A model generated the notes under the pieces. It was not told the origin of the DNA, searched no databases, and saw nothing but the letters and a program-made list of their open reading frames with translations. Of a stretch of DNA of 64,000 nucleotides, positions 2,494 through 51,688 are shown piece by piece. Each line of letters opens with the position of its first letter. Position 1 is the first letter of the stretch. Location: the IMG/VR virus record IMGVR_UViG_3300031576_000002, positions 1-64,000 of that record. The stretch is one strand, 5' to 3'. A program made the position numbers and the translations under genes.

Positions 2494-2724
2494 TCATATT
2501 TTTGGGGGGTCAGCAGCAACGCCGGTGCCCTCCAAACGCTGCGCGAGCGCTTCGTAGATTTTCGGATCCGCTCCGGGCAGTTCACCCAGCGCGCGCAAGA
2601 TTCCGGCGTGTGCACGTAGGACGGCCGCTGCGCTTTCCTCCGGCCCCATTCCGTACTCTTGCCTCAGCGCCCAGAAGCTCGCCATCGTCACGGATGCCGC
2701 CTTGTTGATTAGCTCTCGCCTCAT
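2494..2724 (-). CDS. Hypothetical protein (MRRELINK...)
   Basis: ATG at 2724 immediately outside the TnpB cassette target duplication. Confidence 0.5.
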   Translation of the reverse strand: MRRELINKAASVTMASFWALRQEYGMGPEESAAAVLRAHAGILRALGELPGADPKIYEALAQRLEGTGVAADPPKI

Positions 2725-2733
2725 CGCTCCACC

Positions 2734-3959
2734 CATGCGTGACCGCTTAAGCCGCCACCTGAGCAGCACTTAAGCCATCCTCTCGCTTCACAGAGGACCT
2801 TACAAGCGTATCCTCTCCACGAAGGGACAGCAGAGCCCTGTCTAAGACATTCTTAGCAGCGTTGACATCTCTATCAAGAACCAGGTTGCAGTAAGGACAA
2901 CTGTGACTTCTTTCTCTCAAACTCTTCTTCACAGTCATTCCACATCCACTGCACTCTTGGCTGGTTCCTCTGGGATCTACTTTCACCACTATCCTACCAG
3001 CTTCTTCCGCTTTGTAGGACAGCATGTGAAGCAACATCCCCATTCCGACATCCTTGAAGCTACGTCTGAATCCACGGTTGAGCCCTTGACTCATCCCTTT
3101 CAGGTTCAGGTCTTCAACCGCAATCAGATCATAGTTCTGTACCAACTGCTTAGACACTCCGTCAAGAATGTATTTGCGGGTTCTTGTTACTTTCTGCCAA
3201 GCCTTAGCCAATACCTTGACTGCTTTTCTTCTACGGTTAGAGCCTTTCTTTCTTCTGGAAACCGTTCTCTGAGCATGCTTGAGCTTCTTCTCATTCCTGG
3301 CATAAACCCGTTGCCTCTCGATAAGGACTCCATCTGATGTAGCAACCAGAGCTTGCATGCCTAGATCAATGCCTATGACTTTGCCAGTCTTGGGGAGAGG
3401 TTCTGGAAGCGGTAGCTCACAGGATAAGACTGCGTACCAACCGTCAGCCTCTCTTTTGACTGTGACCTCTTTGACCTTAGCGTCTGGTGGAAGCTCTCGA
3501 TAAGGACTCCAACGGAAATGCCCCAGTTTGGATAGGTGAAGTCTCGGCCTATCAAACTTGAATCCAGTGCGGTTGTAGGTAAAGGAGTCGTACCGATCTC
3601 TGCTCTTGAATCTTGGAAAACCTGGCTTCTCTCCGCGCTTGACCCTTCTGAAGAAAGCCTTGTACGCTTTGTCCAGTTTCTGAAGGACTTGCTCAAGAAC
3701 TCTTGAATAGATTGTGTCATAGCCTTCTACCTGCTTGGAAACATGCTTAAGCTCCAGGCACTGATCGTAGTAGCTGAGAGTCCGCTTATGCTGCTTCCAC
3801 CCTAGGATTCGCTGTTCCAAGGCACAGTTGTAGAGGAAGCGGCATTGATCCAAGAGCCTCTGGAGGTTGATCTCCTGGGCTTTGGTCGGTTGAATCCGGA
3901 ACTTGTAGGAACGGCGCATAACTGCGGTATATCATAAATGGCTTAAGACGTCACACATG
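2734..3959 (-). mobile_element. Non-autonomous tnpB cassette with 20-bp terminal inverted repeats and 9-10-bp target-site duplication
   Basis: CATGCGTGACCGCTTAAGCC (2734-2753) vs GGCTTAAGACGTCACACATG (3940-3959): 17/20 complementary; flanks TCGCTCCACC (2724-2733) and CCGCTCCACC (3960-3969); no transposase inside. Confidence 0.8.
2747..3919 (-). CDS. tnpB: RNA-guided endonuclease TnpB (IS200/IS605 OrfB family)
   Basis: N-terminal HTH (YKFRIQPT), RuvC motifs GIDLG / VEDL / DRDVNAAKN, Zn finger CSGC...CPYC. Confidence 0.95.
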   Translation of the reverse strand: MRRSYKFRIQPTKAQEINLQRLLDQCRFLYNCALEQRILGWKQHKRTLSYYDQCLELKHVSKQVEGYDTIYSRVLEQVLQKLDKAYKAFFRRVKRGEKPGFPRFKSRDRYDSFTYNRTGFKFDRPRLHLSKLGHFRWSPYRELPPDAKVKEVTVKREADGWYAVLSCELPLPEPLPKTGKVIGIDLGMQALVATSDGVLIERQRVYARNEKKLKHAQRTVSRRKKGSNRRRKAVKVLAKAWQKVTRTRKYILDGVSKQLVQNYDLIAVEDLNLKGMSQGLNRGFRRSFKDVGMGMLLHMLSYKAEEAGRIVVKVDPRGTSQECSGCGMTVKKSLRERSHSCPYCNLVLDRDVNAAKNVLDRALLSLRGEDTLVRSSVKREDGLSAAQVAA

Positions 3960-4289
3960 CCGCTCCACCGGGAAGCGCCGGTCGATCTCTTCTGTCAACA
4001 GGCGCAGGCAAAGCACTTTCAGATTGTTTACAGCGATCGGAATGTCTCGATCGTGCGTCAGAAGGTAGAGCAGATAGCTCGTCTTAGATCGACGAATCGA
4101 CTCGATGAATTGCAGACCGAACTCTCTTGCTTTCTCGCGAGTCGTGCCCGGCGGGTAGACCGGCTCCGCTGCGAGAACTCGGTCTAGCTCTTGAATCGAG
4201 CGCTCAGACCAGCGCTCCTCTTCCGACTTCTCCGCTTCATTTCCCGTCATTGCTCTTTTCCTCGGGCTGCCGGAGTACATGGTTCGCAA
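3951..4289 (-). CDS. Hypothetical protein; stop codon lies inside the cassette TIR
   Basis: ORF track. Confidence 0.5.
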   Translation of the reverse strand: MRTMYSGSPRKRAMTGNEAEKSEEERWSERSIQELDRVLAAEPVYPPGTTREKAREFGLQFIESIRRSKTSYLLYLLTHDRDIPIAVNNLKVLCLRLLTEEIDRRFPVERHV

Positions 4290-37890: not shown

Positions 37891-39127
37891 ACTGGCTTTG
37901 CCTCAGAGTTCAGTAGGAGTTTAGCCGTGCTAAACCGCTACCCTTTCCTGAGTTGCAGCTTCCTCTCTACAAGCAAGATCCGCGTATGGTTGAAAGCCAG
38001 CAACCCTACCAAGATCACGAATGTTCTTGGCAGCGATGGTATCCGCAGGACCAGCATATCCGCAGCGGATACACTTGAACCAACCCCTTTCAGGACGGTT
38101 CTTCTTGTCAATACAGCCGCATTCAGTACAAGTTCTGGAAGTGTTCCTGGGATCGACCAAGACCACAGGAACTCCACATCTTCTTCCCTTGTACTGAATG
38201 AAGCTCCTCAACTGGTAGAAGCTCCAAGAGTGATGTTGACGCCGCTGAGCCTTTCTCACAGTTACTCTCTCCGTGATTCCAGTAAGGTCTTCCAAAGCAA
38301 CGGCACGGAGAGTGTCCTTGGCTTTCGTCACCACCTTCTTAGAGGTGCAGTGATTCACGTCTCTACCAAATCTGGACTCTTTACTTCTCCTCTTTCTGAG
38401 GAGCCTTTTTGCTGACTTGGTCCCTTTGGCTTGCAATTTTGCTCTTAGCTTGGAATGCCGATGTCTAAGCCCATTCACACGATCACCGGAGTAGGTGTCT
38501 CCGTCGGAATCGGCAAGGATATTCTTGACACCAAGATCGCAACCAAGAACATCTTGAGTCTGGATGAGAGGGGCCTCTGGAATGTCAAGAACTTGGTGGA
38601 TGTAGAAACGACCATCTCTGAATACCAAAGTTCCGTCTAGCTTACTGGAAAGATCGACTTGGAAAGGATTATGGAATCGGTAACGGCTTCCGTAGATGAG
38701 AATGGTTCCATCCCTCTTGCAGCTATGCCTGTGAACTGGAATCGCAGAATGTGGGCGGAACTTGACCTGTTTAAGGGCTCTCGGTCTGAAACTCTTGCCG
38801 TGCTTTTTCTTGAGCCTTTGGTTGGTAGACCTGAGCTTGGTTCTGGCTGTCTTGTAAGCAAAGGCAACTCTACGAGCTACTCTTTGTGCCTGGACTCCGG
38901 TAAGGTCGAAAAGTTCCTTGATCTCTCTATAGACCAAGTTGTTGAGAACAACCCACTGAAAAGTCTTTTCTTGGAGCGCAACCGCAGAGACATAGTTACA
39001 GGCTTGGTTGAAGACTTCCACCCTGGAGAGGAGTCCAGAAGTATCTGAAAGCGGGATCTGGAAGGTCAGGTGCATGGCACTAGATTAAACTACCTCAAAT
39101 TTTGAGGCAAGCCCTCATGTACTATAC
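37891..39127 (-). mobile_element. Solo tnpB element (IS200/IS605-related, no tnpA) with hairpin-bearing ends; boundaries approximate
   Basis: Hairpins CCTCAAAATTTGAGG upstream and GTTTAGC-ACG-GCTAAAC downstream; end segments recur at 61537-61578. Confidence 0.6.
37930..39075 (-). CDS. tnpB: RNA-guided endonuclease TnpB (second, divergent clade)
   Basis: GCDLG, LEDL, WSFYQL..FIQYK, TSRTCTECG...CIRCG...ADTIAAKNI. Confidence 0.93.
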   Translation of the reverse strand: MHLTFQIPLSDTSGLLSRVEVFNQACNYVSAVALQEKTFQWVVLNNLVYREIKELFDLTGVQAQRVARRVAFAYKTARTKLRSTNQRLKKKHGKSFRPRALKQVKFRPHSAIPVHRHSCKRDGTILIYGSRYRFHNPFQVDLSSKLDGTLVFRDGRFYIHQVLDIPEAPLIQTQDVLGCDLGVKNILADSDGDTYSGDRVNGLRHRHSKLRAKLQAKGTKSAKRLLRKRRSKESRFGRDVNHCTSKKVVTKAKDTLRAVALEDLTGITERVTVRKAQRRQHHSWSFYQLRSFIQYKGRRCGVPVVLVDPRNTSRTCTECGCIDKKNRPERGWFKCIRCGYAGPADTIAAKNIRDLGRVAGFQPYADLACREEAATQERVAV

Positions 39128-49666: not shown

Positions 49667-49854
49667 GGATCTCGCTTCCCAGACGCACGTATGTCTTCGT
49701 CGATCAGATTTTCGATCTGCCTGTGCAGGTCCGCGCTGACTTGTTCAAGGTCTTCACCATCAGCGACAGTCGTTGTGATACTGGTGGAGAATTCGACGGA
49801 CTGGTAGTCAGCCGACACTCTCTTGACTACGCCCTTGCTCAGCTTCAACGGCAT
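49618..49854 (-). CDS. Small hypothetical protein
   Basis: 'SADYQSVEFSTSIT' pattern; ORF track. Confidence 0.5.
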   Translation of the reverse strand: MPLKLSKGVVKRVSADYQSVEFSTSITTTVADGEDLEQVSADLHRQIENLIDEDIRASGKRDPWIQRIVTKAFQVKSA

Positions 49855-51688
49855 GGGGTTTCTCGCGCAGGGCTCGCCGGACCTCTTTCAAAAACTCGGG
49901 ATCTTCGCTGAGCGCCTGCTTTAGCTTTTCGCGACCGATGTAGCTTCTCCCCAGCAGCGTGAGTTTTCTACGGTCGCCTTCTACTATACCGCGTGAGATT
50001 GCGGCGCGAAGAACGCCGGAAACCACGTCGATTCCAGTTTTGTAATTGAGGATGACCTCGGCCTCTCCGCCTGGAGGGGCAAACTTGTTTTTCACTACTT
50101 TGATCTTGACCGTGTGCGCGTCTGGAATTTTATCTCCGCCGGCACGACTTACCCGCACGCTGAGCGCCTTCCAGTGTTTCAGCGCTCTCCCGCCGGGCTG
50201 ATCTTCGGGACTGCCCCACATGACATTCACTTTGCTACGGAGCTGGTTGATGAATACCAACACGGTACTCGTCTTGTTAAGACGGGGAGCGATCTTCGCA
50301 AGTCCGTGCTGGACAAGGCGTGCTTGCAGGCCGGGAATCTCTTTGTCCTCGACATCTCCCGCAACGACCCGGGCAGGCGTCACGACTGCGATCGAGTCCA
50401 CCACGATCACGGCGTAGCGATCCTGGTCGATCAGCGCGTAGAGCAGATCGAAGAAGCGTTCGCCACTGGGAACGCCGTCTGAATTCTCGGGAAGGCCCTT
50501 GACCCGCACCAACCGCTTGCGCTGAATTCCAAGCGTCCGCATCCAAGTAGGAGGAGTTGCCTGCTCCAGATCGCAGTAGACACACGGTTTCTTCAAGTCC
50601 TTTTGAATAGAGCCAATCATGTGAAGCATGAGCGCCGACTTCCCTGAATTGTGAACAACGAAACCATTTGCTACATAATTGTTGAACGGGCTTGCCACCC
50701 TCAAGTCGTATGTTCGGCATTTGCCCGCTTTACGAATGACAGAAATGTGATCCTCTACTGCCACAAAACGTAGATTGTTGTGCCGTTCAAGTGCATGCTC
50801 CCTTCCATGCGCGCTGGGCGACATTACAACAAGATTTTCTAATGCGTCATTTTTACAGTCTTCGTCTAGGTGGTGTACGTGCTCTGCTTGAGATAAGAAC
50901 TTTAACCCTTCAAGCCGCCCGTCGTTAAGAAGCCGAACATACTCCTTAAACGATAGTCCGTTCAAAGCAGCTTCCACGACAGCCCTGGAACGCCTTAGCC
51001 TGCGGTAGGTGTAGCATTTGCCCGCTGTGCCAGGCACTCTCTTAGTAGGGGCGTTGGGATGGAACTTCACAAAAATGTCAATTCGACTAATAGCTGGAGT
51101 ACGCTCGCGCACACGGTACGGAGTACGATTGTGGATATAAACTGAGTCACCTACTACCAAATCGGCCAAAGCTGTATAGCACTCACCTGTCCAGAATTTG
51201 TGCTCAGGTGTAGCTTTTAGACGGTACCCCTTAAACGTCTCAACTTCTAGGCATTGCCGCACACCCGTCGAGATTACATCCACAACTCTATTTTGAAAAA
51301 TACGCCCCTCTTCGTTCACGCAAGAAGTAAAAAAGTATGAATCGACTATAGCAGAGCGCTTATACATCCCTAGTCCTGACATCGGAATCCCGTGAAAACG
51401 GTTGTACAGCCGCTCAACCGTCCCCCCTTTGCAGCTTTGACGCCGCCCTTCTGGGGTTCGCGTGCCATAGCGTATAAAAGTGCTAGCCTCCACGCAGGAT
51501 TCCGGACCCCAGGCTTCCACAATCTTGCCTTGGGGAAGGCCCCCAATTCCAGTAGCTACATCAAAATCCTCGATGCCAGTCGAGTAGACGCGGGTGTACT
51601 GATCGTCTGCCTCAAATCCTCGTCCGATGCAGGGACCGAATTTGGCCACCAGTCCGTCTAACTCGTTCTTTTTCTTTTCTTCTTTCAT
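49808..51688 (-). CDS. recA: RecA-like recombinase with an intein in the P-loop
   Basis: GIGGLPQGKIVE.WGPES/SGKS, VVDS, QARL, FINQLR, PGGRALK, KNKFAPP. Confidence 0.95.
   Translation of the reverse strand: MKEEKKKNELDGLVAKFGPCIGRGFEADDQYTRVYSTGIEDFDVATGIGGLPQGKIVEAWGPESCVEASTFIRYGTRTPEGRRQSCKGGTVERLYNRFHGIPMSGLGMYKRSAIVDSYFFTSCVNEEGRIFQNRVVDVISTGVRQCLEVETFKGYRLKATPEHKFWTGECYTALADLVVGDSVYIHNRTPYRVRERTPAISRIDIFVKFHPNAPTKRVPGTAGKCYTYRRLRRSRAVVEAALNGLSFKEYVRLLNDGRLEGLKFLSQAEHVHHLDEDCKNDALENLVVMSPSAHGREHALERHNNLRFVAVEDHISVIRKAGKCRTYDLRVASPFNNYVANGFVVHNSGKSALMLHMIGSIQKDLKKPCVYCDLEQATPPTWMRTLGIQRKRLVRVKGLPENSDGVPSGERFFDLLYALIDQDRYAVIVVDSIAVVTPARVVAGDVEDKEIPGLQARLVQHGLAKIAPRLNKTSTVLVFINQLRSKVNVMWGSPEDQPGGRALKHWKALSVRVSRAGGDKIPDAHTVKIKVVKNKFAPPGGEAEVILNYKTGIDVVSGVLRAAISRGIVEGDRRKLTLLGRSYIGREKLKQALSEDPEFLKEVRRALREKPHAVEAEQGRSQESVG
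50648..51496 (-). mobile_element. Intein with HNH endonuclease (283 aa)
   Basis: Starts CVEASTFI, ends TYDL.V...NNYVANGFVVHN/S; internal HVHHLDEDCKNDALENL. Confidence 0.92.

What the first reader, a model, noticed from the sequence alone, without database searches (positions are those of the whole stretch)
2724..3969. Solo TnpB packaged in an IS4/IS231-like TIR + target-duplication cassette
Seen: intact tnpB (RuvC D/E/D present) bounded by 20-bp inverted repeats (17/20), with the tnpB stop codon inside the TIR's CTTAAG, an extra subterminal CTTAAGCC at 2769-2776, and a direct repeat CGCTCCACC (10 bp with one mismatch) on both sides. Removing the cassette restores an ordinary ATGA overlap between the flanking genes (...GTGGAGCGATGAGG...). 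Established: IS200/IS605 Y1 elements have neither TIRs nor target duplications; those are DDE features. From memory the IS231A TIR is CATGCCCATCAACTTAAGAA, the same CATGC-N7-CTTAAG layout, and IS231 makes 10-12-bp duplications and passenger-carrying MIC cassettes; this recall needs checking. Inference: a TnpB mobilised in trans by an IS4-type transposase, paralleling the Fanzor/DDE associations seen in eukaryotes.
Basis: partly seen in the sequence, partly recalled or inferred. Interest (0 to 1): 0.85.

Follow-up and report, generated by a model that had tools for sequence, protein, structure and literature searches.

The report
TnpB cassette with IS4-type ends
A phage genome carries an RNA-guided nuclease gene (tnpB) packaged between the inverted ends of an IS4-family insertion sequence and flanked by a 10-bp target duplication, so this TnpB lineage has apparently swapped its usual single-strand transposase for a borrowed cut-and-paste one.

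Summary
A 1,226-bp element (2734-3959) holds only an intact tnpB. It is bounded by 20-bp inverted repeats (17/20) and by a 10-bp direct repeat (9/10).

The window is the start of a 205-kb phage contig. That contig holds two more copies (about 90% aa identity) at other sites, with the same ends and their own 8-10/10 direct repeats. A 54%-identical relative (L021) has homologous ends and a perfect 10-bp duplication.

The same terminal 20-mer ends three insertion sequences in bacterial MAGs whose transposases score as IS4 family (NF033592, 214-223 bits) and carry the YREK motif. ISHvo12 of Haloferax has near-identical ends and a perfect 10-bp duplication. The cassette encodes no transposase, and none was found in the window.

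TnpB is under purifying selection (dN/dS about 0.1). The inner part of the right inverted repeat forms the last hairpin of an omegaRNA-like structure. More distant TnpB relatives sit beside Y1 TnpA genes, so this clade switched transposase type.

The ends fit the ISH8/ISHvo12 type better than IS231. TnpB in DDE elements is already published, so this is a new variant rather than a new kind. Trans-mobilisation and TnpB's role are inferred.

The parts
3960..3969 (-). Upstream copy of the 10-bp target duplication (GGTGGAGCGG on the - strand); it encodes the last residues of the upstream phage gene
   Evidence: 9/10 identical to 2724-2733
3940..3959 (-). Left terminal inverted repeat (CATGTGTGACGTCTTAAGCC on the - strand); it supplies the TGA stop (3951-3953) of the upstream phage gene
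2747..3919 (-). tnpB, 390 aa, intact RuvC D185/E269/D351 and C4 zinc finger
   Evidence: dN/dS 0.10-0.14 between the three copies
2734..2923 (-). omegaRNA-like structured region overlapping the 3' end of tnpB. It has a conserved core at 2782-2838 and a terminal hairpin (about 2741-2781) whose 3' arm is the inner part of the right inverted repeat, followed by 7 unpaired nt (ACGCAUG) at the element end
   Evidence: 14 of 32 pairs with compensatory changes; terminal hairpin z = -2.1 to -3.7 in five elements
2734..2753 (-). Right terminal inverted repeat (CATGCGTGACCGCTTAAGCC on the + strand), containing the tnpB stop codon; 19/20 identical to the end of an IS4-family IS (L140)
2724..2733 (-). Downstream copy of the 10-bp target duplication (GGTGGAGCGA on the - strand); it holds the Shine-Dalgarno-like GGAG and the A of the ATG of the downstream gene, and would be the first 10 nt of the TnpB guide
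3951..4289 (-). Upstream phage gene (112 aa, no known family), lengthened by two codons by the insertion
2494..2724 (-). Downstream phage gene (76 aa from the ATG at 2724, no known family)

Best explanation
The element at 2734-3959 is a non-autonomous insertion cassette. It has two IS4-family terminal inverted repeats of the ISHvo12/ISH8 type (consensus CATGCGTGATCGCTTAAGCC). These enclose nothing but a functional tnpB and its omegaRNA.

Shown by sequence comparison:
- It was inserted at a staggered cut about 10 bp wide, which is the signature of IS4-family DDE transposition.
- The site lies exactly at the ATGA junction of two phage genes.
- The duplicated 10 bp keeps both genes usable.
- The phage carries three diverged copies at different sites.
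- The TnpB lineage descends from Y1 (IS605-type) associated TnpBs.
- The last hairpin of its guide-RNA scaffold is now built from the inner 13 nt of the right inverted repeat.

Inferred:
- An IS4-family transposase encoded elsewhere, most likely in the host, binds the repeats and cuts and pastes the cassette in trans.
- The omegaRNA runs out of the right end, so the guide is the 10-bp duplication plus the adjoining flank (for this copy GGTGGAGCGATGAGG...).
- TnpB would then cut genomes that have the uninterrupted site, for example co-infecting phages or a site left after excision. Recombinational repair from an occupied copy would then spread or retain the cassette.
For: 1. Boundaries. Alignment of the three copies in the 205-kb contig shows homology starting at CATG and ending at CATG, with unrelated flanks.

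2. Duplications. The flanking 10-mers match 9/10 (copy A), 8/10 (B), 9/10 (C) and 10/10 (L021). The joint chance probability is about 3e-19.

3. IS4 ends.
- A scan of 185,579 genomes for the end motif gave 55 loci. About 40 are an unrelated conserved gene.
- Three loci (L140, L147, L164) place the motif at the outer end of IS elements of about 1.46-1.48 kb. Their ORFs hit DDE_Tnp_1 (up to 2.7e-23) and NCBIfam transpos_IS4_1 at 223 and 214 bits against a cut-off of 115. They carry Y-x2-R-x3-E-x6-K.
- L147 has 17/20 inverted repeats and a 9/10 duplication.

4. ISHvo12. It was found through transposase similarity alone (about 41% identity). Its ends are CATCCGTGTTCGGTTAAGCG and CATTGGTGTTCGGTTAAGCA, with a perfect 10-bp duplication. 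One end is 18/20 identical to the L021 cassette end.

5. Published IS4 table: subgroup ISH8 has ends CAT-----------T----- and 10-bp repeats; IS231 has CAT-------AA--TAA--- and 10-12 bp (PMC2266710).

6. No transposase in the cassette. No IS4-like hit in the window or the other fetched phage stretches (best tblastn E = 0.9) or in viral contigs.

7. TnpB is functional: intact domains and catalytic residues, and dN/dS 0.10-0.14 at dS 0.45-0.60.

8. Guide RNA: conserved structured RNA with compensatory pairs. The terminal hairpin uses the repeat in both subfamilies, despite different sequences.

9. Ancestry: the ten closest TnpBs form one clade (support 100) with no Y1 gene nearby. Among the other 89 TnpBs, 29 have a Y1 gene within 1.5 kb, and 9 of 10 tested upstream ORFs are Y1_Tnp.
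Against: - No IS4 transposase with these ends was found in the phage parts I could read. The host is unknown, so no partner is identified and no transposition is demonstrated.
- No empty site exists in any database. The flanking genes have no homologues, so the duplication is inferred from the repeats alone.
- The duplications are imperfect in all three phage copies. The copies are old (dS about 0.5), so they may no longer move.
- Six other members of the TnpB clade keep the CAT(G/C)CG right terminus but have no detectable left repeat or duplication.
- The bases just upstream of the four duplicated targets share no motif (TTCCC, CCTAT, CTTCA, ATTCA). This sits uneasily with a homing role that needs a fixed TAM.
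- No Rfam family matches the RNA. Its ends are not mapped.
Confidence: 0.8

Rival explanations
1. The cassettes are old, now immobile remnants of IS4-type insertions. The phage keeps tnpB for a job of its own (for example cutting competing phages or host DNA, or as an RNA-guided regulator), not for the element's spread.
For: - The copies differ by 12-14% in DNA with dS 0.45-0.60, yet dN/dS is only 0.10-0.14.
- The duplications are imperfect.
- No transposase partner was found.
- Six clade members lack a left repeat.
- There is no shared TAM-like motif next to the targets.
- The whole clade sits in phage-like contigs.
Against: - The inverted repeats are far better kept (15-18/20 within each copy; up to 18/20 between ends of different copies) than neutral DNA would be at this divergence.
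- The catalytic residues are intact, so a regulator-only role is not indicated.
- The left repeat has no known role in the RNA, yet it is conserved in all three copies.
Confidence: 0.3
2. It is an ordinary IS200/IS605 (IS1341-type) solo tnpB moved by a Y1 TnpA. The inverted and direct repeats are coincidental or are the usual subterminal hairpins.
For: - The TnpB protein belongs to the family, and its more distant relatives (40-47% identity) are next to Y1 TnpA genes.
- The right end can form a hairpin.
Against: - Four independent insertions each have their own 8-10/10 flanking repeat (joint p about 3e-19).
- There is no common 4-5 nt motif on the left flank.
- Both ends are inverted copies of one 20-mer that also ends IS4-family elements.
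- No Y1 gene lies within 1.5 kb in any of the ten clade members.
Confidence: 0.02
3. The cassette belongs to another duplication-making system (another DDE family such as IS5/ISL2, IS630, ISAs1 or IS256, or a Cas1-type integrase), not IS4.
For: - Published DDE-TnpB associations involve ISL2, IS630 and IS1031 (PMC13565253).
- Pfam DDE_Tnp_1 alone does not separate IS4 from IS5.
Against: - The transposases that share the ends score as IS4 family well above the curated cut-off and carry YREK.
- Duplications of 2-4 bp are expected for IS630 and the IS5 groups, against about 10 bp here. The figure for those families rests on my own knowledge and on PMC13565253 for IS630.
- CAT ends with 10-bp repeats fit the IS4 table.
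Confidence: 0.03
4. The flanking repeats were made by TnpB itself. Its staggered cut at a guide-matched site was filled in around an inserted copy, so no transposase was involved.
For: - The apparent duplication length varies (8-10 bp), with odd bases next to the left end in copies A, B and L147.
- Cas12-type nucleases leave 5' overhangs (my own knowledge).
Against: - L147 and ISHvo12 have no tnpB at all, yet show the same ends and 9-10 bp repeats.
- The model does not explain why both ends are inverted copies of an IS4 terminus.
Confidence: 0.02

Closest known systems
DDE-transposase-associated TnpB branches of prokaryotes (Altae-Tran et al. 2023, PMC10691335; summarised in PMC13565253)
   Same: TnpB sits inside elements with inverted terminal repeats instead of IS605-type asymmetric ends. 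The tnpB 3' end lies close to the element end. Solo TnpBs bounded by the same ends as transposase-bearing elements are reported, implying trans-mobilisation.
   Different: The DDE partners named there are IS630, ISL2 and IS1031. I found no mention of IS4-family ends or of about 10-bp duplications, but the supplementary tables were not readable. No element holding both this TnpB and a transposase was found here.
Fanzor1 in IS4-type elements of Ectocarpus siliculosus virus 1 (Bao & Jurka 2013, PMC3627910), and Fanzor guide RNAs that embed the repeats (PMC10711439)
   Same: A TnpB-family nuclease rides in an IS4-type element with 18-bp inverted repeats and 8-bp duplications, in a large DNA virus. 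In Fanzors the inverted repeat is part of the guide-RNA scaffold, as predicted here.
   Different: Those are eukaryotic-virus elements of another IS4 subgroup, with divergent Fanzor1 proteins, and some carry the transposase as well. Here a standard 390-aa bacterial-type TnpB sits in a phage, with no transposase and a variable 10-bp duplication that cannot be part of a fixed scaffold.
MIC231 / IS231 mobile insertion cassettes (IS4 family; cited in PMC2266710)
   Same: IS4-family ends flank passenger DNA without a transposase and are moved in trans. The ends start CAT and share TAA at positions 15-17. Duplications span about one helix turn.
   Different: The IS231 consensus AA at positions 11-12 is not met. 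IS231 is almost confined to the Bacillus cereus group and has a target preference. The transposases sharing these ends are closest to haloarchaeal ISHvo12-type enzymes. The cargo here is an RNA-guided nuclease.
ISHvo12 (Haloferax volcanii pHV1) and related IS4-family elements found here (L140, L147, L164)
   Same: Near-identical 20-bp ends (up to 19/20), 9-10 bp duplications and a size of about 1.4-1.5 kb.
   Different: They encode a YREK DDE transposase of about 430-480 aa and no tnpB. The cassette encodes tnpB and no transposase.
IS200/IS605 family, IS1341-type solo tnpB
   Same: The TnpB protein domains, catalytic residues and size match. An omegaRNA-like structure overlaps the 3' end of the gene. 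The phylogenetic neighbours are Y1-associated.
   Different: That family has no inverted repeats, no duplication and a fixed left-flank motif (PMC13565253). All three features fail here.

Membership tests
TnpB (OrfB_IS605 / Cas12f1-like RNA-guided nuclease) | HTH, OrfB_IS605 and TNB zinc-ribbon domains, with RuvC D-E-D | tested here: met
   Pfam hits at 4e-12, 1.4e-22 and 7.4e-23. D185, E269, D351 and four Cys are invariant.
TnpB (OrfB_IS605 / Cas12f1-like RNA-guided nuclease) | Guide RNA (omegaRNA) encoded at the 3' end of the gene and running out of the right end | tested here: inconclusive
   There is a conserved structured region with compensatory pairs and a terminal hairpin. No Rfam match and no RNA data.
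IS200/IS605 element (IS1341-type) | No terminal inverted repeats; asymmetric ends with subterminal hairpins | tested here: not met
   20-bp inverted repeats sit at the exact ends of all three copies and of L021.
IS200/IS605 element (IS1341-type) | No target duplication; insertion 3' of a fixed 4-5 nt motif | tested here: not met
   Flanking repeats match 8-10 of 10 bp at four insertions. The left flanks share no motif.
IS200/IS605 element (IS1341-type) | Y1 (HUH) TnpA in the element or genome | tested here: not met
   An HMM built from nine Y1 proteins finds none within 1.5 kb of any of the ten clade members. The rest of the phage genome and the host were not searchable.
IS4 family, non-autonomous derivative (mobile insertion cassette) | Ends homologous to those of IS4-family elements | tested here: met
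   The window's right end is 19/20 identical to the L140 end and 18/20 to L147 and L164. The L021 end is 18/20 identical to ISHvo12. Those elements' transposases hit NF033592 at 214-223 bits.
IS4 family, non-autonomous derivative (mobile insertion cassette) | Target duplication of about one helix turn (8-13 bp) | tested here: met
   9/10, 8/10, 9/10 and 10/10. L147 gives 9/10 and ISHvo12 10/10. The table is in PMC2266710.
IS4 family, non-autonomous derivative (mobile insertion cassette) | No transposase inside; passenger gene only | tested here: met
   tnpB fills 1,173 of the 1,226 bp.
IS4 family, non-autonomous derivative (mobile insertion cassette) | A cognate DDE/YREK transposase available in trans that moves it | not testable with these tools
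   None in the window or fetched phage stretches and none in viral contigs by two peptide patterns. The host is unknown.
IS231 subgroup of IS4 | End consensus CAT-------AA--TAA--- and 10-12 bp repeats | tested here: inconclusive
   CAT and TAA (positions 15-17) are present, but AA at positions 11-12 is absent in all six ends. The repeats are about 10 bp.
ISH8 subgroup of IS4 | End consensus CAT-----------T-----, 10-bp repeats, no target preference | tested here: met
   All ends start CAT, and position 15 is T in 14 of 15 ends. Repeats are 10 bp and the targets are unrelated. ISfinder's subgroup listing of ISHvo12 could not be consulted.

The most novel reading that the evidence does not exclude
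A phage-borne clade of ordinary bacterial-type TnpB has left its Y1 (IS605) transposase, taken up IS4-family ends, and rebuilt the last hairpin of its guide RNA out of the DDE inverted repeat. The guide then starts in the freshly made 10-bp target duplication. This would be the prokaryotic counterpart of the Fanzor1/IS4 arrangement. In this reading TnpB works as a homing drive that converts cassette-free co-infecting phage genomes.
Probability: 0.35. Interest if true: 0.75.

Novelty: new variant of a known kind. Interest (0 to 1): 0.6.

Why it matters
TnpB is the ancestor of Cas12 and a compact genome-editing nuclease. Its biology is understood almost only in the IS605 and IS607 setting, where the transposase leaves a scarless empty site that TnpB re-cuts.

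A natural, multi-copy, selectively maintained TnpB inside a cut-and-paste IS4 cassette poses a concrete question. How does a guide that begins in a random 10-bp duplication find a usable TAM, and what does the nuclease gain for an element whose excision already leaves a break?

The case also gives a clean prokaryotic example of a transposase switch with co-adaptation of the guide-RNA scaffold to the new ends. That step has been postulated on the road from TnpB to eukaryotic Fanzors.

Because the carrier is a large phage, TnpB may act as a homing-type drive among phage genomes. The parts are small (a 1.2-kb cassette and 20-bp ends) and easy to test in laboratory E. coli.

Tried and rejected
- Empty sites. 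The flanking genes were searched in viral contigs, by exact-protein look-up and in the 5.8-billion-protein set. Only the phage itself was found, so no uninterrupted allele could be compared.
- Second assembly. An ENA assembly of the same phage (205,093 bp, circularly permuted) carries the same copy at the same site, so no polymorphism was seen.
- End motif in viral contigs: only this contig.
- IS4 transposase in viral contigs, searched with an alignment of three enzymes: nothing confirmed.
- Rfam scan of the element: no family.
- Phage GenBank records. DNA search gave one weak hit. Protein search gave TnpBs of at most 42% identity.
- Metagenome scan with the clade alignment. None shows the repeat-plus-duplication signature, apart from one likely chance case, L058.
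- The two TnpBs in L022 are unrelated to each other, so they did not help define the ends.
- Left repeats for L020, L022, L023, L108, L109 and L110: none above the shuffled background. An 8-bp repeat near L023 lies inside a neighbouring gene and is judged chance.
- Promoter and terminator scan. The only hit of interest is a weak sigma-70-like match at 2877-2849(-), just upstream of the RNA core, and it is no better than chance.
- Most of the 55 genome hits for the end motif are a conserved coding sequence of Lachnospiraceae and others. L122, L125 and L150 are chance hits in unrelated genes.
Full report
**Observation**

On the minus strand an ORF of 390 codons (2747-3919) encodes a TnpB. It has the three Pfam domains of the family and the RuvC residues D185, E269 and D351, plus a four-cysteine zinc finger.

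The ORF lies in a 1,226-bp block (2734-3959) whose two ends are inverted copies of one 20-mer, matching 17/20. These are the only two matches to that motif in the 64-kb window, even with three mismatches allowed, against 0.06 expected by chance. The tnpB stop codon lies inside the CTTAAG of the right repeat, and a second CTTAAGCC lies 16 nt further in.

Immediately outside the block the 10-mers 2724-2733 and 3960-3969 agree at 9 of 10 positions. The block has 47-50% G+C, against about 60% around it.

Removing the block and one repeat copy in a script gives GGTGGAGCGATGAGG. In that junction the upstream ORF ends ...PVER* and its stop overlaps the ATG of the downstream ORF. With the block present, the upstream ORF reads two codons into the left repeat and stops at a TGA there. 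The downstream ORF keeps the GGAG-containing repeat copy in front of its ATG.

**Context**

The window is bases 1-64000 of a 205,227-bp IMG/VR contig. It has portal, large terminase, DNA polymerase, helicases, an SbcC-like protein and a RecA/UvsX-like recombinase, so it is a large tailed phage. An ENA assembly of 205,093 bp is the same genome, circularly permuted.

**Three copies define the element**

The contig holds two more copies outside the window (L002, L003), about 90% identical in protein. In a three-way DNA alignment, similarity begins at the first CATG and stops at the last CATG, and the flanks are unrelated. Each copy has its own flanking 10-mers:

| Copy | Left flank | Right flank | Match |
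|---|---|---|---|
| A (window) | GGTGGAGCGG | GGTGGAGCGA | 9/10 |
| B (L002) | CCCGTCGAGC | CCCGTCGAAT | 8/10 |
| C (L003) | CTAACTACTA | CTGACTACTA | 9/10 |

**Relatives**

A 54%-identical TnpB on an unrelated metagenome contig (L021) has ends CATCCGTAATCGGT... and CATCCGTGATCGGT..., with a perfect 10-bp repeat GATCAGGATT on both sides. Its stop codon also lies inside the right repeat. The joint chance probability of these four flanking matches is about 3e-19.

I scanned about 100 TnpB loci the same way. Only these four, plus one weak and probably chance case, show the signature.

**Whose ends are these?**

A scan of one genome per species (185,579 genomes) for CATGCGTGAYNNCTTAAGCC returned 55 loci.

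- About 40 are one conserved coding sequence, mostly in Lachnospiraceae, and are irrelevant.
- Three more (L122, L125, L150) are chance hits in unrelated genes.
- In three MAGs from different phyla (L140, L147, L164) the motif is the outer end of an element of about 1.46-1.48 kb. It sits 10-17 nt beyond the end of a long ORF that matches DDE_Tnp_1.
- NCBIfam assigns these ORFs to transpos_IS4_1, with 223 and 214 bits against a cut-off of 115. The two halves of the interrupted L147 gene also hit it.
- The L140 and L164 ORFs carry the Y-x2-R-x3-E-x6-K signature of the IS4 family (sequences printed; definition in PMC2266710).
- L147 has 17/20 inverted repeats and flanking 10-mers CGTGATCGCA and CGTGATCGCG.
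- One further identical 45-nt end occurs at three contig ends with different flanks, as expected of a multi-copy IS.

Independently of the motif, the closest annotated relatives of the L140 transposase are haloarchaeal IS4 elements. One of them, ISHvo12 on Haloferax volcanii pHV1, has ends CATCCGTGTTCGGTTAAGCG and CATTGGTGTTCGGTTAAGCA and a perfect 10-bp duplication CTCTCCAGAG.

- The window's right end is 19/20 identical to the L140 end.
- The L021 right end is 18/20 identical to the ISHvo12 left end.
- The consensus of all 15 ends is CATGCGTGATCGCTTAAGCC.

The published table of IS4 subgroups gives ISH8 the ends CAT-----------T-----, 10-bp repeats and no target preference. It gives IS231 the ends CAT-------AA--TAA--- and 10-12 bp repeats. 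The cassette meets the first fully and the second in part.

**No transposase in cis**

The cassette has no room for another gene. tblastn with the IS4 enzymes finds nothing in the window or in the other stretches of the phage I could read (best E = 0.9). A viral-contig scan with an alignment of three such enzymes confirmed none. Whatever moved the cassettes therefore acted in trans. The host genome is the likely source, but that is an inference.

**The cargo is alive**

Between the three copies dS is 0.45-0.60 and dN/dS is 0.10-0.14, so TnpB is under purifying selection.

The last 190 nt of the gene and the right end are conserved across the clade at the DNA level. The pattern is that of a structured RNA: 32 predicted pairs, 14 of them with compensatory changes.

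I folded the last 51-71 nt of five elements separately. Each gives a hairpin whose 3' arm is positions 8-20 of the right inverted repeat, leaving exactly 7 unpaired nt before the element end. The z-scores are -2.1 to -3.7. The two subfamilies achieve this with different sequences: GCUUAAG/CUUAAGC in the phage copies and UCGGCCAAGC/GCUUGACCGA in L021.

The IS4 end is therefore part of the predicted guide-RNA scaffold, as described for Fanzor RNAs in eukaryotic DDE transposons (PMC10711439).

**Origin**

In a tree of 99 TnpBs from the fetched loci, the phage copies, L021 and six others form one clade with full support and no Y1 gene nearby. Y1 TnpA genes lie within 1.5 kb of 29 of the other 89 TnpBs, spread over all other branches. 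Nine of ten upstream ORFs tested are Y1_Tnp. The lineage thus comes from IS605-type ancestors and changed its means of transport. The clade members whose neighbours could be read lie in phage-like contigs.

**Most likely mechanism**

An IS4-family transposase binds the two 20-bp ends, excises the cassette and joins it to a target cut with a stagger of about 10 bp. Repair duplicates the 10 bp. Copy A survived because it landed on the stop/start overlap of two genes, where the duplication restores both.

The omegaRNA is made from the 3' part of tnpB and continues past the right end, so its guide would be the duplication plus the next bases. With a suitable TAM, TnpB would cut only the uninterrupted site and recombination would copy the cassette in.

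The architecture, the IS4 kinship of the ends, the duplications and the selection on TnpB are shown. The trans-acting enzyme, the RNA ends, the TAM and the homing role are inferred.

**What is known, and novelty**

- IS200/IS605 and IS607 elements have neither inverted repeats nor duplications (PMC13565253).
- Altae-Tran et al. described six TnpB branches associated with DDE transposases, all with inverted terminal repeats, and solo TnpBs with the same ends (PMC10691335). The partners named are IS630, ISL2 and IS1031.
- Bao and Jurka found Fanzor1 in IS4-type elements of an algal virus, with 18-bp repeats and 8-bp duplications (PMC3627910).
- I found no description of bacterial-type TnpB in IS4-family cassettes, or of such cassettes in phages. 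The PNAS supplementary tables could not be read.

The finding is therefore a new variant of a known kind.

**Open points**

- In copies A and B and in L147, the mismatches between the repeat copies lie next to the left end. The duplication may really be 8-10 bp and variable, or this may be chance.
- The bases upstream of the four targets share no motif.
- Six clade members have the right terminus but no left repeat.
- No empty site exists in the databases.

Noticed in passing
window 37930-39075 (-): A second, divergent TnpB homologue (381 aa; Cas12f1-like_TNB 9e-19 and OrfB_IS605; 29% identical to the cassette TnpB over 207 aa). No inverted repeats bound it. It is a different kind of TnpB locus in the same phage.
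   Followed up: partly
L002:1658-2284 (+) (contig about 157.7-158.4 kb): Another distant TnpB-like stretch (30% identity over 217 aa), about 1.7 kb upstream of cassette copy B.
   Followed up: no
window 49808-51688 (-): The RecA/UvsX-like recombinase gene (626 aa) is interrupted by an intein (Intein_splicing, 3.6e-09) with an HNH endonuclease-like part.
   Followed up: partly
tnpB nt 630-720 and 810-900 (window about 3290-3200 and 3110-3020) versus L002: Copies A and B differ by 0-1 bases per 90 nt in these two stretches, against 7-21 elsewhere. This suggests gene conversion between cassette copies within the phage genome.
   Followed up: no
window 2849-2877 (-): A weak sigma-70-like match (TTGATA, 17 nt, AAGAAT; 9/12) ends just upstream of the conserved RNA core. 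It could be an internal promoter for the omegaRNA, but the score is no better than chance for the region.
   Followed up: no
L111-L165 (genome scan): The 20-mer CATGCGTGAYNNCTTAAGCC also occurs in a conserved protein-coding sequence of about 40 genomes, mostly Lachnospiraceae. This is unrelated to insertion-sequence ends and is a caution for motif scans.
   Followed up: partly
L139:2051-2189, L149:1-139, L163:1-87: An identical 45-nt IS end starting with the same 20-mer sits at three contig ends in two MAGs, with different outside flanks. It is probably a multi-copy IS4-type element that broke the assemblies. Its interior was not available.
   Followed up: no
L022 (JGI 3300009031 contig): A phage-like contig with two unrelated tnpB genes 1.8 kb apart and a PARP-domain gene between them.
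   Followed up: no
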